Source: Octopus sinensis
Lineage: Eukaryota
NCBI RefSeq assembly: GCF_006345805.1
Contig: NC_043014.1
Coordinates: forward strand, 38,378,001-38,442,000
Direction: 5' to 3'
Length of the DNA: 64,000 bases
Shown: piece by piece, positions 10,041-48,176 of the stretch
Layout of the letters: each line of letters starts with the position of its first letter
Numbering within the stretch: the first letter of the stretch is position 1
The notes under the pieces: generated by a model
The model's database searches: none
The model's input: only the letters and a program-made list of their open reading frames with translations
Told to the model about the DNA's origin: nothing
Made by a program: the position numbers and the translations under genes

Positions 10041-10641
10041 TATATCTAAACGTATTAAGCAAACATTTAAATATAAGTAACATACGATACAAAGGGGTAA
10101 AAAAAACAACACTACAAAAATGAATTTTCTTTCCACTGAGAACAGTTTTACAAAAAATCTAAGCTATAATTATGAATAACAAATAAACACTAAATAACTT
10201 TAACTCAATTAGATTCATAAGCTAATTGTCCACAGGATTAAAATGAAAACCCGCTTGTTTAAAAATTAAAAATTCGCTTTTTTTTTCCACACACACACTC
10301 ACAAACAATGAAGTGATATTTCAGCTTATAAGTAAAAAATCAAAAACAGGTACATATATAGTTTATTTGTATTGAGCAAGTATTAAAATTTCTTGTTTGT
10401 TTATTCAAAAGATGACGTTCTTGCTTCTGGACGCATCTTGCTATAAGAAAAATTTAAAAGATTAATTGGACAGAGATAGGGAATACCGAGGGACACCTGC
10501 TGCATCAGGAACTAAGAATAAAGTGGACACAAAGACACTTAATTAATTGTAAGCCAATAAATGGTTTTAAAGTTAAACTATAATTAAAATTAAATAAAAA
10601 TTGCAGACGTAATGACAAAATTTGAATGCATCTTATATTAC

Positions 10642-22558: not shown

Positions 22559-22639
22559 TTTATTCACAATCATATTCCATATACATTTATATATTCATTT
22601 CATTATCATCTTCGTTGTCTTGTGCTTATATCCTTTATT
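22559..22639 (-). terminator. Candidate poly(A) signals of the peroxidase gene
   Basis: AATAAA overlapping the stop codon (22639-22634) and a second at 22564-22559. Confidence 0.45.
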
Positions 22640-22845
22640 GCTGAGCTCGATTTCGACACACTTGTACTTGGGTTTCTTCTGCTACCCCGTCGCAAGAACA
22701 AGGACCATCAACTGGGGCGGCACAAGCTCTAGTTCGACTCATCTGGCCATCAGCGCAAGCAGTCCAAGCAGACCAAACACCGTAACTTCTCACCAGAGCG
22801 CAGACATCAGCAGATGGCAAACTGTTACAGTTGACCAAGGGGTTA
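22635..22845 (-). CDS. Peroxidase-family gene, exon 14 (end of peroxidase domain, TSP1-like tail, stop)
   Basis: ttttttcaacag|, 211 nt. Encodes NPLVNCNSLPSADVCALVRSYGVWSAWTACADGQMSRTRACAAPVDGPCSCDGVAEETQVQVCRNRAQQ*. The 14 exons sum to 2796 nt = 931 aa plus stop. Confidence 0.9.
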
Positions 22846-24357: not shown

Positions 24358-24460
24358 GTGTCAGAGATTTGCAGAAAAGCATCAGCTTGGATCTGTTCGA
24401 TGTTGGTGTTGTCACAGATTAATCGAGACATTGTAACGTTTCTTACAGCAGCCAAAGTAT
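24358..24460 (-). CDS. Peroxidase-family gene, exon 13
   Basis: ttccattgtag|...ACAC|gtaagt, 103 nt. Encodes DTLAAVRNVTMSRLICDNTNIEQIQADAFLQISD. Confidence 0.93.
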
Positions 24461-24789
24461 CTACAATGGAATATTGTTACAGAGGGATATTATAGGCCAG
24501 AAATCCAACTGTTAGAAATATCTTTACCCGAAAATAACCCCGTACATCACTTAATCTATTCTCTCTTCCCCTGTGTAGGCAATTTAACTGACTGAATTGA
24601 CTCCAAGTAACATTAGAGATTCACGACGAAGTATCTCGTTTTGTCTGACTCACTACCGAGATATCACATTTTGTTTGACTTTCTATCGAAATACCACATT
24701 TTGTGTGACTCTACTGATTCCGGCATCCTAACGCCGTTCTAATTTAAACGTACATAAAAGCTGGTCATTAAAAAAGAAATTTGTATTAC

Positions 24790-24956
24790 CGAGCGATAAC
24801 TGGTTGGGTCCGGCATTTTCGTACCAGAATCTGTCTCCGACTTTCAAAGCTTGGAACTGTCGTGCTGTAATGCAAGCTAATGTAGGACCAACATCGCCAC
24901 CTGCAACTTGGATTTCGGACACACCACCACTCCATACGTCAATATCGGCAACATTC
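24790..24956 (-). CDS. Peroxidase-family gene, exon 12
   Basis: atttttcag|...CTCG|gtaata, 167 nt. Encodes NVADIDVWSGGVSE...VGPTLACITARQFQALKVGDRFWYEN. Confidence 0.95.
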
Positions 24957-25395
24957 CTGAAAAATGTAAAGACAAAAATGTGTTATTAGTATAAATGGGG
25001 GTAATGGGAGAAAATGAGGTCTCATACATGCAGAAATGTGTTTGTTTGGGTGTATGCTTAAAACGTTGGCTTTTCAAATTTCAGGTTCAGTCTTATTGCG
25101 CGGTTTCTTGGGCATATGTCTTTTAGCCCCGAGTCAACTATGTGAGTGAATTTGGTAGACGGAATCTGTGTGGAAGTCCATCATACATATATATGGTGTG
25201 TGTGTGTGTAGGATTGGATGTGGGGTAAGTAGCTTGCTTACCAGCCACATGGTTCCGGGTTCAGACCCACTGCGTGACACCTTGGGCAAGTGTCTTCTAC
25301 TATAACCTCGGGCCGACCAAAGCCTTGTGAGTGGATTTGGTAGACGGAAACAGAAGCCCGTCGTATATATGTTTGTATATATATATATATATATA

Positions 25396-26608
25396 CTAGC
25401 AGAATTGCCCGGCGATCCTCGGGGCTGAATTGCTTGAAAGTACTGCTAATGATTGCACTGAATTATGATGACTATTCAGGCAAATATTGATATAAGTTTA
25501 CGGTGGGAGATAAGGACTTAACGATCAAACGTGTGCCATTGCATTGTTTTGGGGGAACCAAATTTCTAATGAGCATTATAGGGGCACCAACTTTAAGTTT
25601 GAGAATGTGTGGTGGTAGTCCGGGGGGCTCAAAGGAATTGAGTACCTCTATAGGATAGTTGATGACGTCCTCTGGGTCAGAAGTTGTATCGATAGACTTA
25701 TATACATAGACATCCCCAGCAATGAATTTTAGCATTTCATCATTAATATGGTGAACAGTTTTATTCCTCGGGGCCAGAATAGCCCTTTGGCCAATCCAAT
25801 CCATTTTCTGATAATTAGCTTGTAGATCTGGGAACACTGCATCTCTGAGATCAGAAGGCGTTTTAACAATGGTACAAATGGAATCGATGGCAATATTACC
25901 ATTTTCATCCCCTGGTATTTTGCCTTCGCCGAGTGCAAAAGTACGTACTGGTGGGGGTCGACTTCTTTGATTAAGCCCCTTCAAATTGATGCCCCAGAAT
26001 GGCTGCTTTCCAATGAGAGAAACAAGTAAGAGATAAAAGATATGATAAGAGAAAGTTACCCGAGGAATTAGCATACGTTAAAGACGAGCTAATTTCGATT
26101 TTTGATGGTAACTTGGTTGCAGGAATGTCTGTGCGTTTAAGAAGCTGTTTCGCAACTATGTGGTTATGGATTGACCGCCCCCTTTTTACGTAGCACTGCA
26201 CAACAATTTCAATAAGGTCTGATCTCCGATCAAGGGATAACTTTTGCACTTCTTCCTGTGAAGTAGGTCATGGACACCCTTATAATTTTAAGACTTCAAA
26301 ATATATTTAATATAAACTCAAGGCACCCTTTGTGTTGCGGAATCGTTGCATTCCTGAAAATATTTCCGTAACATGGAGTTCCGTAACGAGAAACCCACTT
26401 ATCACTGGCTTTCTCGTTGCATAGACGTTAAAGTGAGAGGAATATATTTTGCGTCACGAAATCCTACACCGCGGCAAAGTTCTCAAGAATGCCATACTGT
26501 GATAAAGCGAAGGGTGCCTATATTTCATTCCATGTTTATATTCGTAGAAAGGGCTGGAAAGTTACAAGGAATAATATTTATAAATCTGATAATATGAATA
26601 TCGTTAGA
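25396..26608 (-). mobile_element. Internally deleted Helitron with PIF1-type helicase fragment, in peroxidase intron 11
   Basis: 5' A|TC at 26608; 3' GC-rich hairpin then CTAG|T at 25396. ORF 25472-26074 contains RAILAPRNKTVHHIN...YPIEVLNSFEPPGLPPHILKLKVGAPIMLIRNL...CNGTRLIV (Helitron helicase). Confidence 0.9.
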
Positions 26609-26653
26609 TATTGATTTCTAATATTGGTACTAGGCATTACTTGGATGTGAATG

Positions 26654-26718
<65 letters not shown>

Positions 26719-26947
26719 CAGACAGACAGAGCGGGGGAGGAGGAGAAAGAGGAAGGAAGATAAAGAGAAGTGAGAGAGAGAGGGGGAGAGAGAAAGAGAA
26801 AAGGAGAGAAAGAAAGAAAGAAAGAAAGAGGGACGGAGGGAGAGAAGGATGAAAGAAAAGGTGAGAGAAAGCAAGAGGGAGAGTGAGATAGAAAGAAAGA
26901 GGGAGAGAGTAAAATGGAGAAAGAGAGAGAGAGAGAGAGGAACTCAC

Positions 26948-27160
26948 TCGTAAAGTTGTGAGAGAAGGTTTTGATTTTCTTCAGTGTGATCTACGAGGTC
27001 TGTGAAGTTTTCAGGAACAGACAATCCACACCACTGTCTCCAAGCTGTGTATGATGGGAGTCCATTATCACGTCCTTGCTGGATATTTAGTGCAGCTAAA
27101 TCCCAGCCATTTCCTGGGGCTGTTTCAACTAATCTGTTGGTTAGATCTTCTGTCATCAGT
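26948..27160 (-). CDS. Peroxidase-family gene, exon 11
   Basis: tttttttgtag|...ACGA|gtgagt, 213 nt. Contains DLAALNIQQGRDNGLPSYTAWRQWCGL. Confidence 0.95.
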
Positions 27161-27340
27161 CTACAAAAAAAAAAACGTAATTTAGTACATATAATGGCTA
27201 CCATAACTGTTGTTATTTAGTTCAGCTCCGTTGGAACCGAGAAGACTTATGGTCAAAGGCATTCTAGCAGTTACAGTCTTATATGTCTTCATTTCTTTTA
27301 ACTATTTTGTTACCATATTTCATTTCAAATACTCTGCGCT

Positions 27341-27494
27341 TTTTTGTTGTGTCTGGGAAGAGTCATTCTCTTATAGTGCCTTATCATTTAACACACTCAC
27401 CGGTAAAGTTTCCACTCATGAGTAGAAACTTTACCGGTGAGTGTGTTAAATGATAATGTACTAAAAGAGAATGACTCTCCTCAGACGCAAAAAA
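27341..27494. repeat. Loopless near-perfect palindrome, ~77-bp arms
   Basis: Centre ...tttccactca|tgagtagaaa... at 27418/27419; only a handful of mismatches across the arms. Confidence 0.9.
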
Positions 27495-28044
27495 TATGCT
27501 TCAACACACGAACTCACATAAAGAATCTTGCAAACCAAATCCAAAAGTGAAATACACTGCTTCTATTTCTATAAAATAACAAACCTGTTCATTTATAACG
27601 TAATTATTCTTAAACGCTCTAACAAAATGTAAAAGACGAAAAGAATCGAACTATGTCTCCCGACAGTAACTTATAAAAAGAAAAATTATTTTGAAAATTT
27701 CTTCGGTTTTCAAAGTTTTAACACAAAATAATTACTTTAAACAAGTAATTACGTGTCGATAAAGAAATAGAAAACAGGTGTTTCTAAAATTTGTATTTAG
27801 GTGAAAGATAGGTTTAAATTAACGTAAATCAAGACGGCAGTAATATATTTACTTATTTCTCGGTCGTTGAGAGAAAGGTTTTAATGTAGCTTCTGTCGGA
27901 AATCCGCTTTTAAACTTTCAAAATGATACACTTACTCCTTCAGAAGGCCGCAAGTTCTCGGTGTCAGGAATGAAGTTCTTTGACAAAAAGAACCTCAATA
28001 TCGACTATAAAAATACTCAAACACTATAAGGGAGATGTAATTAT

Positions 28045-28272
28045 ACCTATTTCTTTACTGCCTACAAGGGGCTACACAGAGGGGACAAACAAGGACAGAT
28101 AAACGGATTAAGTCGATTATATCGACCCCAGTGCGTAACTGGTACTTAATTTATCGACCCCGAAAGGATGAAAGGCAAAGTCGACCACGGCGGAATTTGA
28201 ACTCAGAACGCAACGGCAGACGAAATACCGCTAAGCATTTCGCCCGGCGCGCTAACGATTCTGCCAGCTCGC
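28045..28272 (-). mobile_element. tRNA-derived SINE family C, representative copy
   Basis: Head gcgagctggcagaatcgttagc..gttctgagttcaaattccgcc, tail gtagtaaagaaataggtat. Many copies, e.g. about 345-570, 4178-4410, 18655-18862, 32570-34305, 61571-62460. Confidence 0.85.
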
Positions 28273-28433
28273 AGGGAGATGTAATTATACCGTTATTCGA
28301 TACTCGCTGAAACATCCCCTCGGAGGATGTTGTTTCAGCGGATATTGAATAACGCATCATGATAGGTTACACTATGTATGAAAACTCAAGCATCTTTGCT
28401 CTTAGCGCTATTATCCTCAACAAATGGTTTTAC

Positions 28434-28902
28434 CTGTCAACTTCTTGTGCCAAATCAGAGGTAAGTCCTCGGTAAACTAAAGTAGGGGCATCGGTTTCTC
28501 CATAGAAAACATCTGCGTTATAGTACAAGGAAATAAGAGCATTCTGAGTTTCTCCAATGGTAATAAGGCCTCTAATTCCGGAGTGACTGTAGATAATACC
28601 AGCGGCGCCGAAACCATTACGAATAGCAGGATTGATGTTGCCTATGTACAAGGAGTAACCCTCTGTAAGTGAGTTCAGATTGTAGGTGTTCATAAATTCA
28701 GGGCCGAGTACTTTGGGTAGATATTCGTCGTATGCAATGTGTTGCATCTCAGAAATGACGATTTTGCGAGCTTCTTGAAAGACGACTTCGTCGGTCCAAT
28801 CTGGGTGGCCGGTGCTCAGCGCGTTAGCTATGCGGTTGTGTTCTCGAAGGAAGAGGGTGTGTTGGGACATCATCATAGGTTGTACATTAACTCGGTTATC
28901 AC
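28434..28902 (-). CDS. Peroxidase-family gene, exon 10 (distal Arg, proximal His)
   Basis: cccctgcttcag|...ACAG|gtaaaa, 469 nt. Encodes GDNRVNVQP...HTLFLREHNRIA...FQEARKIVISEMQHIAYDEYLP...FGAAGIIYSHS. Confidence 0.97.
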
Positions 28903-29002
28903 CTGAAGCAGGGGAAAAACATAGCAAAAATAAAAGCAAACAAAAAGCATGTTAAAATGAGTGAAGTGTTATATTGATATGAAACAGTAATGGAAATAGA
29001 TA

Positions 29003-29229
29003 CAGGGCGCGGCAGAAAGGTTGCCCCGATTTCAATGGTTAATGAAAAGAACAAATACTTGAAGGTACAAGAAAAAACGTTCTCCACTCCAGGCAATGGT
29101 GGATACTTCCTAAAACGGAAAAAATGGCAAGTAATGAACTTCTTAGAAATCTAAGGTTTTTTCATGCATCTTCCGGTGTGTATTTTTTATTAATCATTGA
29201 AATCAGGGTGTCCTTTCTGCCGCACCCTG
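29003..29229. mobile_element. Tc1/mariner-type MITE, peroxidase intron 9
   Basis: TA|CAGGGCGCGGCAGAAAGG ... CCTTTCTGCCGCACCCTG|TA. The imperfect TIR extends to about 45 bp. Confidence 0.8.
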
Positions 29230-29513
29230 TATATTGTAAATGTATTGATGACGTAAACTTGTATCGGATTCCTCGAAATTCAAGATTTTACTTTATAAAT
29301 CACGTATTTATTACAGAAAAGGCCTGTTAGTCAAGTGTCATTGTTATTTAGCAATTGCCTGGAGCAGTGGAGTAGTGGTTAAGGTTGGACTACCCGAACA
29401 CTATGTGTTCATGTATTGAAACTCGCTCGCAAAGGATTTTATATATCTGCCTATCTCTCCCTTTCTTTCAATCTATCTATCTCGTCCCACATATGCACAC
29501 ACACTTGCACACA

Positions 29514-29551
<38 letters not shown>

Positions 29552-29746
29552 CACACACACACACACACACACATACATAAATGCGAATAGAGTGGGAGAA
29601 AAGCGGTAGAGGTAGAAACATGGTCCTTTACGTATGTAGCAGAACAAACAACTGAATTAAAGAATTCCATTTGATGGGGTTTTTTTATGACACACATCAT
29701 CCAAATATTGAAGTAAATTGGTATTTTTCATTGACAAATCATTTTA

Positions 29747-29785
<39 letters not shown>

Positions 29786-30686
29786 CGCACACACACACAG
29801 AGAGAGGCTTTCACACAGTTATCGTTTAGCAGATTCACTGACAAGTCATTTGTCGGCCTGGAGCTATAGTAGAAAGCGCTTGCTCAAGGTGCCGCGCAGT
29901 GGGACCGAACCCAAAGTCACGTGTTTGCAAAGCAAGTTACTTAAGTATACCACCTATAAGGAAAGATCAGTGCTCAAGATCCTTTAAAGGGTTTCCGATA
30001 ATGTTGGAAGAAAGGGAGGAAGGTATTCTAGTCCCGGAGACCTGACCCCAATGTTTACAACAGAGTCGACTCCGCTGAAGGCCACGAAGGGTCAGGTGGG
30101 GGTGTTAAACCGGGTGACGCTTGGAGTCTACCAATTAAGTTGGCCGTAATGAGATTTGAACCCAGAACCCTCAGAGGTGGAACGAATATCGCAAGGTATT
30201 TGGTCCCACACTCCAACGTTTCTGCCAGTCTACTGCTCTAGTTCTGATACTTTATATATCGACCCCACCGAAGGATAAAATGCCTGATTAACTTCGGTGG
30301 ATTTGAACTCTGAACGCAAGGACCCTGAATAATTACTGCAGTGCATTTCATCGACGTCCCTAAGGTGAGTCCACATTACACTGTAAGGAGCATAAGGATG
30401 AAGCATAAGGATAATTTCCCCGGTTTCTCTGATATATATACACCTCCCTGCACGGGTCGCTAGTCCGTCGCAGGATTACTCATTTTTACCAGACGAGTGG
30501 ACTGGAGCAACGTGAAATGAAGTGCTTCGCTAAAAAAAACAAAAAAAACAACGAACCGCCCGGCTCAGGAATCGAAATACCAATCTAACGATCATGAATC
30601 CAACACTCTAACCACTAGGCCATGCGCTTCCCTAAAGACTGCTGATTCTGTTAAAATATACACTGATAGTTAAGAGAATAACCCAC

Positions 30687-30785
30687 CTCCAATGAAGCAG
30701 AGGTTTCCTTCAGAGGCAAGACAGAATGTGGTGTTAGACTGGGGCAGAAGGTCGAGATCATCAGTTGAGGTTGATCTCATTAGTC
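30687..30785 (-). CDS. Peroxidase-family gene, exon 9
   Basis: tatatttgcag|...GGAG|gtgggt, 99 nt. Encodes GLMRSTSTDDLDLLPQSNTTFCLASEGNLCFIG. Confidence 0.92.
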
Positions 30786-31513
30786 CTGCAAATATACAAG
30801 AAAAAAAAATTTAAATCGATCTCATAAGAACGAATACAAATTATATATACATACACGGGTACGTACGCATAAATAGAAATACTCTCTCTCTCACACAAAC
30901 ACAAGGAAAAGACATGATAGGCATAACATACAGTTTAAACTAGTCGTTTCCTACGTGCGTTTCGCCATTGTGGATAGTTGCATCTTCTGCGATATGTATT
31001 CATAGTGCATGGCTGTATTTCCGTGACTTTATTGGAAGTAGATTGGGTGCTGATACTCTTCACGTGGACCTTTATATATTCACCTGTAGCAGTCGTACAT
31101 CAGACAGCACACTCAGGAACTACTATATATATATAATGACTTTTAAACACCAATGATTCATTTCTCAATGTTAATTATTGGTCCATTTATTATCTTCTCT
31201 TTCTCTTTCTGTGTATATATATATGTATGTATGTATGCATGTATGTATGCATGTATGTATGTATGTATGCTATACAGATAGATATATGTATGTTTTTATT
31301 AATTTTTTTGTTTCAGTCATTTAACTGCCGCCATGCTGGAGCACCGCCTTTAGTCGAACAAATCGACCCCACGACTTATTCTTTGTAAGCTTAGTATTTA
31401 TTCTATCGGGCTGTCTTGCCGAACCGCCAAGTCACGGGGACGTAAACACACCAGCATCGCTTGTCAAGCGATGCTGGGGGGACAAACACAGACACACAAA
31501 CACATACATACGT

Positions 31514-31571
<58 letters not shown>

Positions 31572-31733
31572 GGCGGGCTTCTTTCAGTTTCCGTCTACCA
31601 AATCCACTCACAAGGCTTTGGTCGACCCGAGACTATAGTAGAAGACACTTGCCCAAGGTGCCACGCAGTGGGACTGAACTCAGAACCATGTGGTTGGTAA
31701 GCAAGCTACTTACCACACAACCACTCCTACATG

Positions 31734-31765
<32 letters not shown>

Positions 31766-31987
31766 TGTATGTATGTATATATGTATGTTGTTATGTGTGC
31801 GTGGATATGCATACGCACGAGTGTGTGAACAAAACGAAAGTAGCACTCGATTCAGCCCCACATTACTATCAAGTTTCTTGGATGTAGGACATGTCTACTT
31901 CATCGGATATTCCGAGGAGGCATTTATCAAAAGGGGCCACCACATGCACTCTCCCTCCCCCAACTCACCCACAAACATAAAACTTAC

Positions 31988-32089
31988 CACCAGTCATTGT
32001 CCTCAGTGTGGTTTGTCTGGTCAAATCAGAACCATACACCTGAGATGCATCTATGAAGCTAGTCGCACCGTTCAACTGTTCGCGTGGAC
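31988..32089 (-). CDS. Peroxidase-family gene, exon 8 (Ca-binding loop)
   Basis: catatttcag|...GGTG|gtaagt, 102 nt. Encodes GPREQLNGATSFIDASQVYGSDLTRQTTLRTMTG. Confidence 0.95.
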
Positions 32090-33459: not shown

Positions 33460-33575
33460 CCAAAGCGCAGGAAAGTGGGGGAGTGGCTAGGCTACGGGTG
33501 TATGCCATGCATGTTCTACTGTATTGAGCGAAAAAGGGATCGTCTTCTGGGATGGCGATAGGAAAGCAGATGTCG
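33460..33575 (-). CDS. Peroxidase-family gene, exon 7
   Basis: atcttttcag|...TTGG|gtaagt, 116 nt. Encodes DICFPIAIPEDDPFFAQYSRTCMAYTRSLATPPLSCAL. Confidence 0.95.
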
Positions 33576-35999: not shown

Positions 36000-36024
36000 A
36001 TGTCGTCAGTTTCACAGCAGTCAC
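36000..36024 (-). CDS. Peroxidase-family gene, exon 6 (25-nt microexon)
   Basis: ttcttcttcttttccaccag|GTGACTGCTGTGAAACTGACGACAT|gtaagt. Encodes GDCCETDDI. The phase 1-to-2 shift is required to join exons 5 and 7. Confidence 0.88.
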
Positions 36025-36795: not shown

Positions 36796-36981
36796 CACTT
36801 GTTGGCATAGCAGGATAATCTTGAAGATCGTGGTTGAGGAAGACACCGAACATTGTTAGCAGATGGGTAAAATCAGGATTGACGTTTTCTTGAGTACTGG
36901 CGCCATGGAATGTTGTACTAATCAATCGGGCTCCGGGAAGGTTTCCTCCATTAACACCGGTAGCACGAGGAGCGCTGAGAT
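36796..36981 (-). CDS. Peroxidase-family gene, exon 5 (distal His)
   Basis: tttctcaatag|...AGTG|gtaagg, 186 nt. Encodes DLSAPRATGVNGGNLPGARLISTTFHG...LLTMFGVFLNHDLQDYPAMPTS. Confidence 0.95.
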
Positions 36982-38281: not shown

Positions 38282-38496
38282 CGTCTTCGTAAATAGCTGG
38301 CAAATAACGATCGAAAGGAGTGTTTGATCGGCCAAGGTAGGGGAACAGAAGGTTGTTACAAGAGCCATCAGCAGAACGGTAAGGAACTGTAGCATCACAA
38401 GTTAAGGCTTCGACGAACGGACAATTCTCAACAAGTTCCAAGGGAGGCTGGACTGCAGGTAGAAGATTTTCTGCTGTGATAGCTCCATCGTCTAAC
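38282..38496 (-). CDS. Peroxidase-family gene, exon 4
   Basis: ttatttttcag|...GACG|gtaagt, 215 nt. Contains YRSADGSCNNLLFPYLGRSNTPFDRYLPAIYED, the canonical N-terminal motif of animal haem peroxidases. Confidence 0.95.
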
Positions 38497-39463
38497 CTGA
38501 AAAATAATTTATTCTTTTTCTTAATGGCCACAAGGATTAATATAAATTATACATAAAATACAACACAAGACGATACAAAGGGTTTTCACATTCGTGTAAA
38601 CATTAAATAACAGTAAAAAGGTGACATGGAAAACTCCCACAAAAGCCACGGGTGCCTGATCAACAGGGCAAGAGCCCGTTTTTAATTTTACAGGTGTATT
38701 CTCAGAATTGGTCTAACCTGAAAAATAATGATTGTAGTTTTGACGAACAGATTAATATAAGAGGTAACCTGTAAATTCATAAAGAAAGGACAGATGGCGG
38801 ACAATTATCTATATATTTCTCATGTTCGTACTTTATTCAATTGCACTAACGATATTCACAAGAAGAGCAGTACACACTCGTTCGTGATACTTTGCAGTGG
38901 GTAGAAAGGAAGTTGGGAGAAATCTCATGCAACAGAGTTGAATTCCACCAAATGCACTGACGGGCAGGTGATGATAATTCTGAGGCGTATTAAGCATGAA
39001 GATAGCAAAGCAATTTCGACTGAGAATATAAGTTGATGTCAATGACATGCTGATCAAACAGATAGATAGAAAGCGCCACGACGTCGATCACTACAACTAC
39101 ATTACTGGTTGCAAATTTTGGCATAAGCCTAGCATGTTCGTGGGAGGGGATAAGTAGACTATATCGACCCCAGTGTTCAACTATGTACATATTTTCTCGA
39201 CTCCAAAAGGATGAAAGGCAAAGTCGACCTCGGCAGAATTTGAACTCAAAACGTATAGAAGGACGAAATGCTTCCTAACGATTCTGCCAGCTCCGAGGCT
39301 ATAAATAGAAAACACTCGTCCAAGGTGCCACGCATTGGAATTGAAACCGGAAACATGTGGTTGTGAAGCAAGTTTTCTTACAGCCACGCCTTATTGTCCG
39401 ACCATTCTAACTTTTCTGCCAAAACCGCCGGAGATGGCGGAGCAACGATGATGATGGTGGTGG

Positions 39464-39498
<35 letters not shown>

Positions 39499-39558
39499 TG
39501 ATGATGATGATGATGAAAAGGTGGAGTGAGAGGAGAAGAAATTAAGCAATCGACTTAC

Positions 39559-40219
39559 AGCTGCTGAATCAGTCTTCCAGTGACCACAAATACAAGACCG
39601 GTTTCAGCAATGGCCAACTGGTTATCCGGCAGGACTACAGCTGCCTCTCCGTTCACGACAGTGTCATTGGCAGCGGCAGCAGCAGCAGCGGCAGCGGCAG
39701 CAGCTGCAGCAGCATCGGCAGCGGCAGCGGCTGCAGCAGCAGCAGCAGCATCTTCGGCAGTGACAGCGGCAGCAGCAGCGGCGGCGGCACCGGCAACAGC
39801 AGCGGCAGCAGCAGCGTTGGCGGTGGCGGCCTCAGCAGCAGTACTGGCGGCTAGGGCAGCAGCTTCGGCAGCAACAGCAGCGGCGGCGGTGGCGTTGGCA
39901 ACGGCTTCGGGGTCGTCAGGGTTGGCAGCAGCAATGGCAGCAGCTTCTTCAGCAGCGGCAGCGGCGGCTATGGCAGCATCGGCAGCGGCGGCAGCAGCAG
40001 CATTTGCAGCTTCAGCGTTTGCGGTTTCAGCAGCAGCGGTGTTTGCAGCGACAGCAGCAGCAGCTTGAGCCGCAGCAGCGGTTCTCGCAGTAGCGGCAGC
40101 AGCAGCAGCTGGGGTGAGGTTTCCAATATCGATTACTGCGTTACCAGTTCCAGCATTATTGGCTCCATTGGCTCCATTGGCTGTATTGTCTCCATTGCGT
40201 GTATTGGCTCCTGCTTGAT
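39559..40219 (-). CDS. Peroxidase-family gene, exon 3 (Asn/Gly- and alanine-rich)
   Basis: Acceptor caacttccag|, donor AGCT|gtaagt, 661 nt, phase 1/2 fits both neighbours. Open throughout, with mixed GCN codons. Confidence 0.85.
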
Positions 40220-40233
40220 CTGGAAGTTGAAAG

Positions 40234-40292
<59 letters not shown>

Positions 40293-40502
40293 CAATAAGG
40301 CAGTGAACTGGCAGAATCGTTAGTACACCGGGTGAAATGCTTAGGGGTATCTCATCTACTGCTACGCTCTGAGTTCAGATTCCGACCCTTGCCTTTCATC
40401 ATTTCGGGGATGATAAATTAAGTACCAGTGAAACACTAGAGTCGATCTAATCGATTAGTCCCAGCTCCCCAAATTTCAGGTTTTGTGCTTTAAGCAGAAA
40501 GG

Positions 40503-40556
<54 letters not shown>

Positions 40557-41117
40557 GAGTGAGAGAGCAGTTCATGCCATCAAAGTGACACTGGGGTAAA
40601 ATATACGAAGCCCAATATACCCATCATGACTACCCGTCTGATAAGGGTACACCAGGCACATGCATCACAACCATATGTGCGCGACATGGTGATCTCATAT
40701 CAAGATAAACAGCACCTGACCTTGCAGGTGGGGCCCAGTTAGAATTTTCTTCAGGTTGAGTAGCCCATCCCGCTCAAAAGGTCCCTGAATAAGGGTTGTT
40801 TAAGGATGTTGAAAGAATCACCCATGTTTCCAGAGGTGAATTATTCAAACCCCAAAGAATCCCTCTCAACACATGGCTATGATGCTTCCCCACTACTTCT
40901 GCTCGTGATCAGAGATGCACATATCGTCAGCCATTAAGGGACATGCTCAACTGGTTAAAGTCAAACAACTGACAAGCAAATCTGTGGTATTGAGCAGAAT
41001 ATTTGCTGTAGCCCATCTTTTATACCAAGACAAAACAATGTACTTGATAACACTTCCAATCAGTTAAAATCAGAAGCCATGAGAGCCACTGCCTGGTACT
41101 GCATCAGGGCATTTTTA

Positions 41118-41174
<57 letters not shown>

Positions 41175-41395
41175 CAATAAGGCAGTGAACTGGCAGAATC
41201 GTTAGTACACCGGGTGAAATGCTTAGGGGTATCTCATCTACTGCTACGCTCTGAGTTCAGATTCCGACCTTGCCTTTCATCATTTCGGGGATGATAAATT
41301 AAGTACCAGTGAAACACTAGAGTCGATCTAATCGATTAGTCCCAGCTCCCCAAATTTCAGGTTTTGTGCTTTAAGCAGAAAGGATTATTATTATA

Positions 41396-41430
<35 letters not shown>

Positions 41431-42022
41431 TATTATTGAGTGAGAGAGCAGTTCATGCCATCAAAGTGACACTGGGGTAAAATATACGAAGCCCAATATA
41501 CCCATCATGACTACCCGTCTGATAAGGGTACACCAGGCACATGCATCACAACCATATGTGCGCGACATGGTGATCTCATATCAAGATAAACAGCACCTGA
41601 CCTTGCAGGTGGGGCCCAGTTAGAATTTTCTTCAGGTTGAGTAGCCCATCCCGCTCAAAAGGTCCCTGAATAAGGGTTGTTTAAGGATGTTGAAAGAATC
41701 ACCCATGTTTCCAGAGGTGAATTATTCAAACCCCAAAGAATCCTCTCAACACATGGCTATGATGCTTCCCCACTACTCTGCTTCGTGATCAGAGATGCAC
41801 ATATCGTCAGCCATTAAGGGACATGCTCAACTGGTTAAAGTCAAAACAACTGACAAGCAAATCTGTGGTATTGAGCAGAATATTTGCTGTAGCCCATCTT
41901 TTATACCAAGACAAAACAATGTACTTGAAACACTTCCAATCAGTTAAAATCAGAAGCCATGAGAGCCACTGCCTGGTACTGCATCAGGGCATTTTATTAT
42001 TATTATTATTATTATATTATTA

Positions 42023-42056
<34 letters not shown>

Positions 42057-42260
42057 CATTAAGGCAGTGAGCTGGCAGAATCGTTAGTACACCGGGTGAA
42101 ATGCTTAGGGGTATCTTATCTACTGCTACGCTCTGAGTTCAGATTCCGACCTTGCCTTTCATCATTTCGGGGATGATAAATTAAGTACCAGTGAAACACT
42201 AGAGTCGATCTAATCGATTAGTCCCAGCTCCCCAAATTTCAGGTTTTGTGCCTTTAGCCG
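40293..42260. repeat. 882-bp tandem duplication (about 2.2 units)
   Basis: Unit starts at 40293, 41175 and 42057. Unit = SINE C + (ATT)n + 556-bp element + (ATT)n. Confidence 0.9.
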
Positions 42261-44711: not shown

Positions 44712-44932
44712 TGTTTTGCCGTTCATCAATGGCATCTGATGTTCCGGATCTTCCTCCCGATCTTCTTCCGCCATGCCTTCGTCCGCTACAAGATCCGTAA
44801 CGTCTAAAAAGACATTTGTTTCGTACTATTCTCGATGCTTTTGCGTAGACACTTTGGCATTGTTTATCTTGGAGAGGTGTCAAGCATAAAACTATGCAAG
44901 GTAGAATCGCCAGTAATAAGATTAAAGATGGA
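44712..44932 (-). CDS. Peroxidase-family gene, exon 2 (signal peptide plus basic Arg/Gly segment)
   Basis: Strong acceptor cttttttctcttttccttttcag|, donor AACA|gtatgt, 221 nt, phase 2/1. Encodes RPSLILLLAILPCIVLCLTPLQDKQCQSVYAKASRIVRNKCLFRRYGSCSGRRHGGRRSGGRSGTSDAIDERQN. Confidence 0.8.
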
Positions 44933-48168: not shown

Positions 48169-48176
48169 CGAATCAT
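48169..48176 (-). CDS. Peroxidase-family gene, coding exon 1 (ATG ATT CG, 8 nt)
   Basis: aaccATGATTCG|gtgagat. Phase 2 matches exon 2 and gives signal peptide MIRPSLILLLAILPCIVLC. TATA-like box 55 nt upstream. Confidence 0.7.

What the first reader, a model, noticed from the sequence alone, without database searches (positions are those of the whole stretch)
39559..40219. About 147-residue, ~71% alanine helical-hairpin-like domain fused ahead of the peroxidase domain
Seen: exon 3 encodes an Asn/Gly-rich stretch (NGDNTANGANGANNAG), then 63 residues and about 80 residues of Ala-rich sequence separated by a PDDP turn. By hand count, 105 of 147 residues are Ala, the spacers are mostly D/E/T/N/V, and there is one Arg and no Lys. 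Codons are mixed GCT/GCC/GCA, so this is not a pure triplet expansion. Established: poly-Ala tracts occur in silks and mollusc matrix proteins (beta-sheet) and in type I antifreeze proteins (long helices). Inference: a self-assembling or structural module attached to a possible cross-linking enzyme, i.e. a one-chain scaffold plus curing agent for an extracellular material, or an acidic propeptide spacer.
Basis: partly seen in the sequence, partly recalled or inferred. Interest (0 to 1): 0.75.

Follow-up and report, generated by a model that had tools for sequence, protein, structure and literature searches.

The report
Alanine-rich helical domain of octopus ink peroxidase
The alanine-rich stretch is a real, translated and anciently conserved N-terminal domain of the peroxidase that is abundant in octopus ink; genome annotations miss it, a squid cDNA has carried it since 1993, and its function has never been studied.

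Summary
Minus-strand exon 3 (40219-39559, AG/GTAAGT) encodes a 147-residue core with 106 Ala (72%). It splits into arms of 63 and 80 residues around PDDP, with one Arg and no Lys. The gene is a 14-exon, 931-aa secreted animal haem peroxidase with a C-terminal TSP1-like domain.

The core is coding, not an intron:
- It is in frame in O. vulgaris and Argonauta hians DNA.
- 25 of 41 non-Ala landmarks are identical, with one 12-nt indel.
- Differences fall at codon positions 1/2/3 as 11/22/72.
- An O. vulgaris de novo transcript carries it between exons 2 and 4.
- A Euprymna scolopes cDNA protein (Q24925) has a homologous 141-residue, 57% Ala domain.

The O. vulgaris genome model that splices the core out is probably an annotation error.

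The transcript's product ranks fourth in the O. vulgaris ink proteome, so this is the ink peroxidase. AlphaFold2 predicts two long helices broken at NPDD; hairpin packing is unproven.

The domain lacks every residue that oxidative cross-linking would use, which argues against a "scaffold to be cured". Whether it is kept or cleaved is untested. It is a new member of a known, uncharacterised kind, of moderate interest.

The parts
48169..48176 (-). Coding part of exon 1 (ATG ATT CG), start of the signal peptide. The 5'UTR extends upstream to at least about 48224.
   Evidence: tblastn of P0002; sequence and GT donor
44712..44932 (-). Exon 2: the rest of the signal peptide, the Cys motif CLTPLQDKQCQ..., and a basic Arg/Gly-rich stretch (pI about 10.8 for residues 21-87, which run 9 residues into exon 3).
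   Evidence: the motif is conserved in Euprymna Q24925
39559..40219 (-). Exon 3 (661 nt, 219 whole codons plus split codons at both ends): the finding.
   Evidence: AG acceptor and GTAAGT donor, one open frame; in frame with exons 2 and 4; present in an O. vulgaris transcript
40110..40217 (-). Asn/Gly-rich leader (QAGANTRNGDNTANGANGANNAGTGNAVIDIGNLTP). It contains a 9-nt G-A-N repeat whose copy number varies between genomes.
39921..40109 (-). Ala-rich arm 1: 63 residues, 45 Ala.
   Evidence: predicted helix 31-98 of the exon peptide
39909..39920 (-). PDDP break between the arms. It reads PDNP in Argonauta and VGANA in Euprymna.
39669..39908 (-). Ala-rich arm 2: 80 residues, 61 Ala. It begins with the conserved EAVANATAAA motif (an N-A-T sequon) and ends in Ala runs of 11 and 15.
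   Evidence: predicted helix 103-192
39561..39668 (-). Conserved non-repetitive tail NDTVVNGEAAVVLPDNQLAIAETGLVFVVTGRLIQQ, linking to the peroxidase domain.
   Evidence: Identical from QLAIAETG onward in Argonauta and recognisable in Euprymna
39641..40144 (-). The 504-nt stretch that the O. vulgaris genome annotation (P0001) removes as an intron (GTAACG...CAG, in frame). Judged not to be a real constitutive intron.
   Evidence: acceptor has 7/20 pyrimidines against 9-20 for the gene's real acceptors; the AG is absent in Argonauta; the stretch is retained in a transcript
38282..38496 (-). Exon 4: start of the animal haem peroxidase domain (...PYRSADGSCNN...).
36796..36981 (-). Exon 5 (distal-His motif FGVFLNHD).
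36000..36024 (-). 25-nt micro-exon (GDCCETDD).
33460..33575 (-). Exon 7 of the 14 (ICFPIAIPEDDPFF...SCALG). It is missing from the O. vulgaris model.
24358..32089 (-). Remaining peroxidase exons: 32089-31988, 30785-30687, 28902-28434 (proximal His, HTLFLREHNR), 27160-26948, 24956-24790, 24460-24358.
   Evidence: all have GT-AG boundaries
22635..22845 (-). Last exon: TSP1-like domain (WSAWTAC...) and the stop codon.
   Evidence: PF00090, 22.8 bits against a cut-off of 21.6

Best explanation
**Shown**
- Exon 3 is a constitutive coding exon of the octopus ink peroxidase gene.
- The gene encodes a secreted 931-aa, roughly 97 kDa, pI 4.4 animal haem peroxidase with a C-terminal TSP1-like domain.
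- The exon adds a domain of about 147 residues between a basic Arg/Gly-rich N-terminal stretch and the catalytic domain. The domain is strongly acidic (net charge -12) and 72% alanine.
- The domain has been kept in coleoid cephalopods since before octopods and bobtail squid split. Its length stays at 141-147 residues, its charge at -12 to -14, and specific polar landmarks are retained.

**Predicted**
- It forms two very long alpha-helices, which in octopods are broken at N-P-D-D-P.

**Inferred**
- The domain most likely works as a rigid, chemically inert helical rod or hairpin. It would make the enzyme self-associate, or hold it in the matrix of the ink-gland premelanosome or ink granule.
- The peroxidase is thought to polymerise dihydroxyindoles into eumelanin there.
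- The domain lacks every side chain that quinones and radicals attack, so it would survive the enzyme's own chemistry.

I put about 0.9 on "real, translated, selected domain of the ink peroxidase". I put about 0.35 on the self-association or tethering role, as opposed to a cleaved pro-region. The single confidence value of 0.55 is a compromise between these two figures.
For: **Gene model.** There are 14 exons, all GT-AG, with one open frame of 931 aa. Pfam finds An_peroxidase and TSP_1.

**Conservation**
- The ORF is in frame in O. vulgaris (L001 9766-10527) and in Argonauta hians (L002 9377-10063).
- Octopus and Argonauta align with one 4-codon gap in the core, and 25 of 41 non-Ala residues are identical.
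- Of 91 Ala-Ala columns, 50 use different codons.
- Nucleotide differences by codon position are 11/22/72 (p = 8e-14).
- Between the window and O. vulgaris I count 9 substitutions in the exon, all synonymous, in the nucleotide alignment. The indels are 9, 3 and 3 nt.

**Transcript and protein evidence**
- Transcript Cluster-58773.132244 (953 aa) reads exon 2, then the full exon 3, then exon 4.
- Its product ranks fourth in the O. vulgaris ink proteome, with 268 spectrum matches, 25 peptides and 35% coverage (PMC10142993).
- The peptides LVETAPGNGWDLAALNIQQGR, NGFGAAGIIYSHSGIR and KIVISEMQHIAYDEYLPK are encoded in the window.

**Decapod homologue**
- Euprymna Q24925 (cDNA, evidence level PE=2) has the same architecture, with a 141-residue, 57% Ala, net -14 domain and the shared motif EAVxNATAAAxxAAEA.

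**Structure**
- AlphaFold2 predicts helices at 31-98 and 103-192. pLDDT is 85-92 around the break.
- No K, Y, C, H, M, W or F occurs in the core of any of the three species.

**Role in ink**
- Peroxidases are reported in Sepia premelanosomes and are assigned the polymerisation of DHI/DHICA (PMC4052311).
Against: - No peptide from the domain could be checked. The stored peptide table is cut, and trypsin gives fragments of only 43 and about 180 residues there. Retention in the mature enzyme is therefore untested.
- The structure comes from a single sequence (mean pLDDT 70, pTM 0.47). Hairpin packing was not verified.
- The PDDP turn is replaced by VGANA in Euprymna.
- Two database models omit the region: P0001 and P0002.
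- No periodicity that would indicate a coiled-coil or ice-binding face was found.
- The tissue assignment rests on the ink proteome and on homology, not on expression data for this locus.
- The Euprymna cDNA came from the light organ (my recollection of Tomarev et al. 1993, not read here), so a role in halide oxidation or antimicrobial defence is equally possible for the enzyme.
Confidence: 0.55

Rival explanations
1. The domain is part of a long N-terminal pro-region (exons 2-3). It would be needed for folding, haem loading, ER exit or latency, and would be cut off before or during packaging, as with the myeloperoxidase propeptide. The mature ink enzyme would then lack it.
For: - From my own knowledge, mammalian members of this family (MPO, EPO, LPO) are made with N-terminal propeptides.
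- Pfam's peroxidase profile starts only after the exon-3 tail.
- Arg residues flank the domain, in the RRxGGRRSGGR stretch upstream and at VVTGR downstream.
- A pro-region can be conserved too.
- No domain peptide was seen in the stored part of the ink peptide tables.
Against: - The stored peptide tables are incomplete, and trypsin is nearly blind to the core, so absence says little.
- A length held to within a few residues and 25 of 41 fixed polar landmarks over a deep divergence is more than a spacer needs.
- No canonical dibasic convertase site lies directly after the domain (by eye).
Confidence: 0.25
2. The Ala core is an intron inside the exon (an "exitron"). It would be removed from the mRNA as in the O. 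vulgaris genome annotation, so the protein normally lacks it.
For: - The P0001 model jumps from NNAGT to AVVLPDNQ.
- The removed stretch has GT...AG ends and is 504 nt, a multiple of three.
- P0002 joins exon 2 to LVFVVTGR.
Against: - The de novo transcript retains the core, and the Euprymna cDNA has the homologous domain.
- The listed transcript isoforms are 954, 948 and 864 codons. None is the 168 residues shorter that this splice would give.
- The acceptor has 7/20 pyrimidines against 9-20 for the gene's real acceptors, and its AG is not present in Argonauta.
- The codon-position bias shows selection on translation.
- P0001 also drops two conserved peroxidase exons, and P0002 drops part of one, so both models are unreliable.
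Confidence: 0.04
3. The stretch is a neutrally drifting low-complexity triplet expansion. It happens to be translated but has no function of its own.
For: - Degenerate 3-nt periodicity.
- Small in-frame Ala-run and G-A-N repeat length differences between close relatives.
- No Pfam family and no significant relative among 1.84 billion representative proteins.
Against: - The length is 147/143/141 residues and the charge is -12/-12/-14 in Octopus, Argonauta and Euprymna.
- Landmark residues and an N-A-T sequon are fixed.
- Pro, Ser and Gly are depleted relative to the equally accessible Asp/Glu, Thr and Val.
- All 9 substitutions between the window and O. vulgaris are synonymous.
Confidence: 0.05
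4. The domain converts to beta-sheet and assembles into fibrils, like poly-Ala in silk or the PMEL amyloid of vertebrate melanosomes. These fibrils would form the matrix on which melanin is laid down.
For: - Pure Ala runs of 11 and 15 (longer in Argonauta) are of the kind that aggregates (established knowledge of poly-Ala behaviour).
- The enzyme is in ink, and peroxidase is reported in premelanosomes.
Against: - A helix is predicted with the best confidence in the middle of the domain.
- There are 13 acidic residues and no Gly-rich spacers.
- Nothing here tests assembly.
Confidence: 0.08
5. It is an ice-binding domain of the type I antifreeze or Maxi kind.
For: The top Foldseek hit is 4KE2 (Maxi), with similar composition and size.
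Against: - The hit is not significant: E = 5.9, probability 0.11, TM 0.30-0.33, rmsd 22.9.
- There is no 11-residue periodicity, and phmmer finds no PDB relative.
- Temperate and tropical octopods have no evident need for it.
Confidence: 0.01

Closest known systems
Euprymna scolopes peroxidase-like protein, fragment (UniProt Q24925 = GenBank AAA16244.1, L01771; light-organ cDNA, Tomarev et al. 1993)
   Same: - Same order of parts: signal peptide with the CLTPxxDxxCQ motif, an Arg/Gly-rich basic stretch, an acidic Lys-free Ala-rich domain of about 141-147 residues, IAETGL(V/I)FV...LIQxLL, the haem peroxidase domain, and a Cys-rich C-terminus.
- Shared motifs EAVxNATAAAxxAAEA and AEDAA.
- It is the best BLAST hit of the O. 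vulgaris transcript of this gene.
   Different: - 57% Ala with more Val (17) and Gly (8), against 72% Ala in the octopus.
- The octopod N-P-D-D-P break reads V-G-A-N-A.
- There is no Asn/Gly G-A-N repeat leader.
- It was cloned from the light organ, not shown to come from ink (the tissue of origin is my recollection of the 1993 paper, not read here).
Sepia officinalis ink-gland (melanogenic) peroxidase (Gesualdo et al. 1997; gi 2239176)
   Same: It is an ink-associated animal haem peroxidase of a coleoid. It is assigned the oxidative polymerisation of DHI/DHICA in premelanosomes (PMC4052311). The octopus protein is abundant in ink.
Maxi, the hyperactive type I antifreeze protein of winter flounder (PDB 4KE2)
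   Same: It is a very Ala-rich helical protein of about 190 residues that folds back on itself. It is the top, non-significant, structural hit.
   Different: - The octopus domain has no 11-residue Thr/Ala periodicity.
- The match is not significant (E = 5.9).
- It is unrelated in origin, not fused to an enzyme, and has a different charge.
Myeloperoxidase-type N-terminal propeptide
   Same: It is an N-terminal extension ahead of the catalytic domain of a secretory-pathway haem peroxidase of the same superfamily (PF03098).
   Different: There is no sequence similarity and the composition is completely different. Cleavage of the octopus domain was not tested.
PMEL amyloid matrix of vertebrate melanosomes (functional analogy only)
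   Same: It is a self-assembling protein scaffold inside the organelle where melanin polymerises.
   Different: PMEL is a separate protein that forms beta-sheet fibrils and is not an enzyme. Nothing here shows that the octopus domain assembles.

Membership tests
Animal haem peroxidase (Pfam PF03098, peroxidase-cyclooxygenase superfamily) | Significant match to the family profile over the catalytic domain | tested here: met
   The nearly identical O. vulgaris model P0001 scores 488 bits, and Argonauta P0004 scores 537 bits over profile positions 1-530. The window's exons align to both.
Animal haem peroxidase (Pfam PF03098, peroxidase-cyclooxygenase superfamily) | Distal His and proximal His motifs | tested here: met
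   FGVFLNHD (exon 5) and HTLFLREHNR (exon 28902-28434) are present in the assembled protein. They were read by eye against the known motifs.
Animal haem peroxidase (Pfam PF03098, peroxidase-cyclooxygenase superfamily) | Asp and Glu that ester-link the haem in mammalian members | tested here: inconclusive
   By eye, the equivalent positions read Asn (FLNHD) and Val (GDNRVNVQ). No structural alignment was made.
Coleoid ink / light-organ peroxidase with an Ala-rich N-domain (type: Euprymna Q24925) | Order of parts: CLTPxxDxxCQ motif, Arg/Gly-rich stretch, acidic Ala-rich domain, IAETGLxFV...LIQxLL, peroxidase | tested here: met
   Three-way alignment A2, with 58% identity to Euprymna over the N-terminal 359 residues.
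Coleoid ink / light-organ peroxidase with an Ala-rich N-domain (type: Euprymna Q24925) | The domain is present in mRNA | tested here: met
   The O. vulgaris transcript Cluster-58773.132244 and the Euprymna cDNA (PE=2) both contain it. No transcript from the window's own source was available.
Coleoid ink / light-organ peroxidase with an Ala-rich N-domain (type: Euprymna Q24925) | The protein is present in ink | tested here: met
   It ranks fourth in the O. vulgaris ink proteome, with 15 unique peptides. Three of them were checked against the window's exons.
Type I antifreeze protein / Maxi | 11-residue periodicity of Thr and other ice-binding residues on an Ala-rich helix | tested here: not met
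   No period exceeds the shuffle controls. The peaks near 3.8 and 11-12 residues are below the 95% level.
Type I antifreeze protein / Maxi | Significant sequence or fold similarity | tested here: not met
   phmmer against the PDB finds only a designed repeat protein at E = 7.8. Foldseek hits 4KE2 at E = 5.9 with TM 0.30-0.33.
Silk-like / shell-matrix poly-Ala beta-sheet modules | Short Ala blocks alternating with Gly-rich or other spacers, adopting beta-sheet | tested here: not met
   There is one Gly in 147 residues. The spacers are D/E/T/N/V, and the prediction is helix throughout. Conformation in vivo is not testable here.
Cleaved propeptide of secretory haem peroxidases | Proteolytic removal before the enzyme matures | not testable with these tools
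   The stored peptide tables are truncated, and trypsin yields fragments of 43 and about 180 residues in this region.
Exitron (intron within a coding exon) | The spliced junction is present in transcripts and the splice sites are conserved | tested here: not met
   The only support is one genome model. The transcript retains the region, the acceptor AG is absent in Argonauta, and the polypyrimidine tract is weak.

The most novel reading that the evidence does not exclude
The Ala-rich domain is the cephalopod counterpart of the vertebrate PMEL scaffold, built into the enzyme itself. It would self-assemble in ink-gland premelanosomes, as helical bundles or after conversion to beta-sheet. The matrix it forms would concentrate the peroxidase and template the uniform eumelanin granules of ink. 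Because it lacks oxidisable side chains, it would not be consumed by the reaction.
Probability: 0.1. Interest if true: 0.75.

Novelty: new member of a known kind. Interest (0 to 1): 0.4.

Why it matters
Cephalopod ink melanin is a widely used model and biomaterial, yet how its granules are organised is poorly understood. One of the most abundant ink proteins carries a large domain, conserved since before octopods and bobtail squid split, that is 57-72% alanine and chemically inert.

I found no paper describing this domain. Current octopod genome annotations delete it, truncate it or start after it. Proteomic and evolutionary studies that rely on those models are therefore blind to it.

Correcting the models is a concrete gain. 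Testing whether the domain tethers or assembles the enzyme would address how melanin polymerisation is confined and templated outside vertebrates. It is also a natural example of a very long, soluble, secreted poly-alanine-like helix, which is relevant to poly-Ala aggregation biology and to protein design.

Tried and rejected
1. **Profile search with the exon 3+4 alignment.** The 8000 candidates were flooded by Ala-rich proteins and none scored. The search was wasted.
2. **Chimeric query of the non-repetitive flanks.** It gave 1120 candidates and none scored, not even P0001. This is unexplained.
3. **Full HMMER scan of 1.84 billion representatives with exon 3.** Only the tail matched P0001, so no annotated protein in that library shows the domain. 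HMMER's composition correction may hide others.
4. **Structure prediction with the three-species alignment.** A single-sequence model was used instead.
6. **Logan contig L003 (P0005, 68% identical, probably a decapod transcript).** It loses similarity upstream of exon 4, so it says nothing about the N-terminus.
7. **Periodicity and antifreeze analogy.** Rejected.
8. **Literature searches for an Ala-rich peroxidase domain.** No description was found.
   - The 1996 Euprymna peroxidase paper is not held.
   - The Argonaut eggcase paper mentions peroxidases only generically.
9. **Search for domain peptides.**
   - In the ink peptide tables: not in the stored part, which is cut.
   - In the skin-mucus proteome: absent from the stored files.
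Full report
**1. The observation**

The finding lies on the minus strand. Window 40219-39559 is a 661-nt exon bounded by ...cttccag| and |GTAAGT. One frame is open throughout. It reads:
- an Asn/Gly-rich leader (QAGANTRNGDNTANGANGANNAGTGNAVIDIGNLTP);
- a 147-residue core;
- a non-repetitive tail (NDTVVNGEAAVVLPDNQLAIAETGLVFVVTGRLIQQ).

The core (40109-39669) has 106 Ala (72%). It consists of a 63-residue arm, PDDP, and an 80-residue arm, with one Arg and no Lys. Ala codons across the exon are GCT 66, GCC 41, GCA 8 and GCG 2, and no run of one codon exceeds five. Tandem Repeats Finder sees only a degenerate 3-nt period with 63-72% matches.

GC rises to 0.67-0.69 over the core, against 0.31-0.46 around it.

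**2. The gene**

Using the closest database proteins as guides, I assembled a 14-exon model on the minus strand from 48176 to 22635. Every intron is GT-AG, and the single open frame is 931 aa (97 kDa, pI 4.4). Its parts, in order:
- a signal peptide;
- a Cys motif (CLTPLQDKQCQ...);
- a basic Arg/Gly-rich stretch;
- exon 3;
- an animal haem peroxidase domain (PF03098);
- a C-terminal thrombospondin type-1-like domain (PF00090, 22.8 bits against a cut-off of 21.6).

A 25-nt micro-exon (36024-36000) is required to keep the frame.

**3. Is the alanine core translated or spliced out?**

- The O. vulgaris genome model P0001 (GCA_951406725.2) jumps from ...NNAGT to AVVLPDNQ... This removes window 40144-39641 (504 nt, in frame, GTAACG...CAG).
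- An O. bimaculoides-like model (P0002) joins exon 2 to LVFVVTGR.
- The Argonauta hians model (P0004) is partial and starts at QLAIAETG.

Five lines of evidence show the core is coding.

(a) The genomic DNA of O. vulgaris (L001 9766-10527) and of Argonauta hians (L002 9377-10063) carries the homologous stretch in frame, directly upstream of the annotated sequence.

(b) Octopus and Argonauta align with a single 4-codon gap in the core. 25 of the 41 non-Ala residues are identical in place, including TANAEAANAAAA, EEAAAIAAANPD(D/N)PEAVANATAAA, AEDAAAA and ANDT(V/L)VN.

(c) Substitution patterns fit selection on the protein.
- Of 91 Ala-Ala columns, 50 use different codons.
- In an independent nucleotide alignment, the differences fall 11/22/72 on codon positions 1/2/3 (p = 8e-14), and the only core indel is 12 nt.
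- In a GCN repeat an aligner will tend to pair the G and C columns, so this test is not fully independent. However, variation confined to third positions is itself what selection for alanine produces.
- Against O. vulgaris I count nine substitutions in the exon, all synonymous, in the nucleotide alignment. The three indels are 9, 3 and 3 nt.

(d) The "intron" of the O. vulgaris model is weak.
- Its acceptor has 7 of 20 pyrimidines, against 9-20 for the gene's real acceptors.
- The AG is not present in Argonauta.
- The same model also omits the micro-exon and the following conserved peroxidase exon.

(e) There is direct transcript evidence.
- Supplementary File S1 of the O. vulgaris ink proteome paper (PMC10142993) prints the ORF of a de novo paralarval transcript, Cluster-58773.132244 (953 aa, 99.7 kDa, pI 4.61).
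- That ORF reads exon 2, the complete exon 3 with the alanine core, and exon 4 without interruption.
- The isoforms listed with it are 954, 948 and 864 codons. None is the 168 residues shorter that the annotated splice would give.

A minor spliced isoform cannot be excluded.

**4. What the protein is**

The transcript's product is the fourth-ranked protein of O. vulgaris ink, with 268 spectrum matches, 25 peptides (15 unique) and 35% coverage. Three of its peptides are encoded verbatim in the window. The authors equate it with the ink-sac peroxidase of melanogenesis.

In Sepia, peroxidases are reported in ER-derived premelanosomes and are assigned the polymerisation of DHI/DHICA to eumelanin (PMC4052311). 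The protein was not found in the stored supplements of the same group's skin-mucus proteome.

Its best BLAST hit is AAA16244.1 / Q24925, a peroxidase-like protein from a Euprymna scolopes cDNA (GenBank L01771; Tomarev et al. 1993). From my recollection of that paper, which I could not read here, the cDNA came from the light organ. A second Euprymna entry (gi 159008) is the "halide peroxidase". The enzyme family therefore also has an antimicrobial reading.

**5. Depth of conservation**

The same supplement prints the first 400 or so residues of Q24925. It has the same architecture:
- the CLTPITDDLCQ motif;
- an Arg/Gly-rich stretch;
- an Ala-rich domain;
- IIAETGLIFVETARLIQDLL;
- the peroxidase domain.

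The three species align with small gaps. Their Ala-rich domains compare as follows:

| Species | Length (residues) | Ala | Net charge |
|---|---|---|---|
| Octopus (window) | 147 | 72% | -12 |
| Argonauta hians | 143 | 70% | -12 |
| Euprymna scolopes | 141 | 57% | -14 |

None of the three contains Lys, Tyr, Cys, His, Met, Trp or Phe. The motif EAV(A/N)NATAAA..AAEA, with an N-A-T glycosylation sequon, and AEDAA are shared.

The octopod N-P-D-(D/N)-P break is V-G-A-N-A in Euprymna. The domain thus predates the octopod-decapod split, and it has sat in GenBank since 1993. I found no paper that describes it. No predicted protein among 1.84 billion representatives shows it.

**6. Structure**

AlphaFold2 was run on the single exon-3 peptide. 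It gives helices at 31-98 and 103-192 with a break at N-P-D-D. Mean pLDDT is 70 and pTM is 0.47, with pLDDT 85-92 around the break and under 50 in the leader and tail.

The depletion of Pro, Ser and Gly among one-step neighbours of Ala codons fits selection for helix. Hairpin packing itself was not verified.

The best PDB fold match is the flounder antifreeze Maxi (4KE2), but at E = 5.9 and TM 0.30-0.33. There is no 11-residue or heptad periodicity above shuffle controls, no PDB sequence relative and no Pfam family.

**7. Mechanism**

Shown: this is a translated, selected, acidic, Ala-rich N-terminal domain of the ink peroxidase.

Predicted: it forms two long helices.

Inferred: my preferred reading (about 0.35) is a rigid, chemically inert helical module that drives self-association of the enzyme, or holds it in the premelanosome or ink-granule matrix. 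The fixed length, fixed charge and fixed polar landmarks point to a defined structure rather than a floppy linker.

The total absence of oxidisable or quinone-reactive side chains suits a domain that must sit next to a radical-generating active site.

The main rival (about 0.25) is a cleaved pro-region, as in myeloperoxidase. The available proteomics cannot decide. Trypsin yields only a 43-residue, possibly glycosylated, fragment and a fragment of about 180 residues here, and the stored peptide table is truncated.

The other rivals are less likely:
- a PMEL-like beta-sheet scaffold (0.08);
- neutral low complexity (0.05);
- an exitron as the main form (0.04);
- an antifreeze function (0.01).

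**8. Verdict**

- "real helical Ala-rich domain fused to a peroxidase": yes;
- "scaffold plus curing agent": not supported as stated;
- "propeptide": open.

The gene is a new member of a known kind, the coleoid ink / light-organ peroxidases. Its Ala-rich domain is public but undescribed, and octopod genome annotations systematically miss it. Interest is moderate. It gives a clean annotation correction, an unusual conserved domain, and a testable link to how ink melanin is organised.

Noticed in passing
window 36000-36024 (-) and 33460-33575 (-): A 25-nt micro-exon (GDCCETDD) is needed to keep the frame. The O. vulgaris genome model P0001 skips both it and the next exon, although that exon is a conserved part of the peroxidase domain. 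The public model is therefore defective in the catalytic domain as well.
   Followed up: partly
window 25472-26074 (-): A 200-aa ORF inside an intron matches the Pif1 helicase 2B domain (PF21530, 53.6 bits). It is probably a Helitron or Pif1-like transposon remnant.
   Followed up: partly
window about 40300-40560, 41180-41440, 42100-42260; microsatellites 40234-40292 and 39447-39516: - Three copies of a SINE-like element with (AAT)n tails lie upstream of exon 3.
- An (ATT)20 tract abuts the exon-3 acceptor.
- A (GAT)24 tract sits about 45 nt after the donor.
- Argonauta also has a long CAT/CAC-type microsatellite just after the homologous donor (L002 about 10070-10600).
   Followed up: no
window exon 5 (36796-36981) and exon 28434-28902 (-): By eye, the positions matching myeloperoxidase Gln91, Asp94 and Glu242 read Val, Asn and Val (FGVFLNHD, GDNRVNVQ). 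The haem may not be ester-linked, and halide binding may differ. Paralogues P0006 and P0007 also show Asn and Gln/Asn at these positions.
   Followed up: no
window 40158-40197 (-): The 9-nt repeat encoding G-A-N varies in copy number. The window has fewer copies than the O. vulgaris genome, which has fewer than the O. vulgaris transcript. The two terminal Ala runs differ by one residue each.
   Followed up: partly
window 38282-38496 (-) and the whole gene: The window differs from the O. vulgaris reference by about 1.4% in exon 3 and by NNLLFPY against NNIQFPY in exon 4. It probably comes from a sibling species or population (O. sinensis?). The source was not identified.
   Followed up: no
window 39580-40068 (+): The antisense strand also gives a 162-aa Ala-rich ORF. 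This is a mechanical consequence of GCN repeats (NGC in reverse, read one base shifted) and not evidence of a gene.
   Followed up: yes
PMC10142993 supplement; paralogues P0007 / P0008: A second peroxidase (Cluster-58773.74875, 741 codons per its FASTA header (the protein table gives 740 aa), chorion-peroxidase-like) is also in the ink proteome. It has an ordinary N-terminus without any Ala-rich domain.
   Followed up: partly
locus L003 (Logan SRR29271487 contig, 2144 nt): A transcript contig encodes a 68%-identical peroxidase, probably a decapod orthologue. It loses all similarity upstream of the end of exon 4, so it may be a chimeric assembly or use an alternative 5' end.
   Followed up: partly
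window 22635-22845 (-): The peroxidase ends in a thrombospondin type-1-like domain (WSAWTAC...CSC...C). This domain is also present in the Argonauta protein and in the decapod-like P0005.
   Followed up: partly
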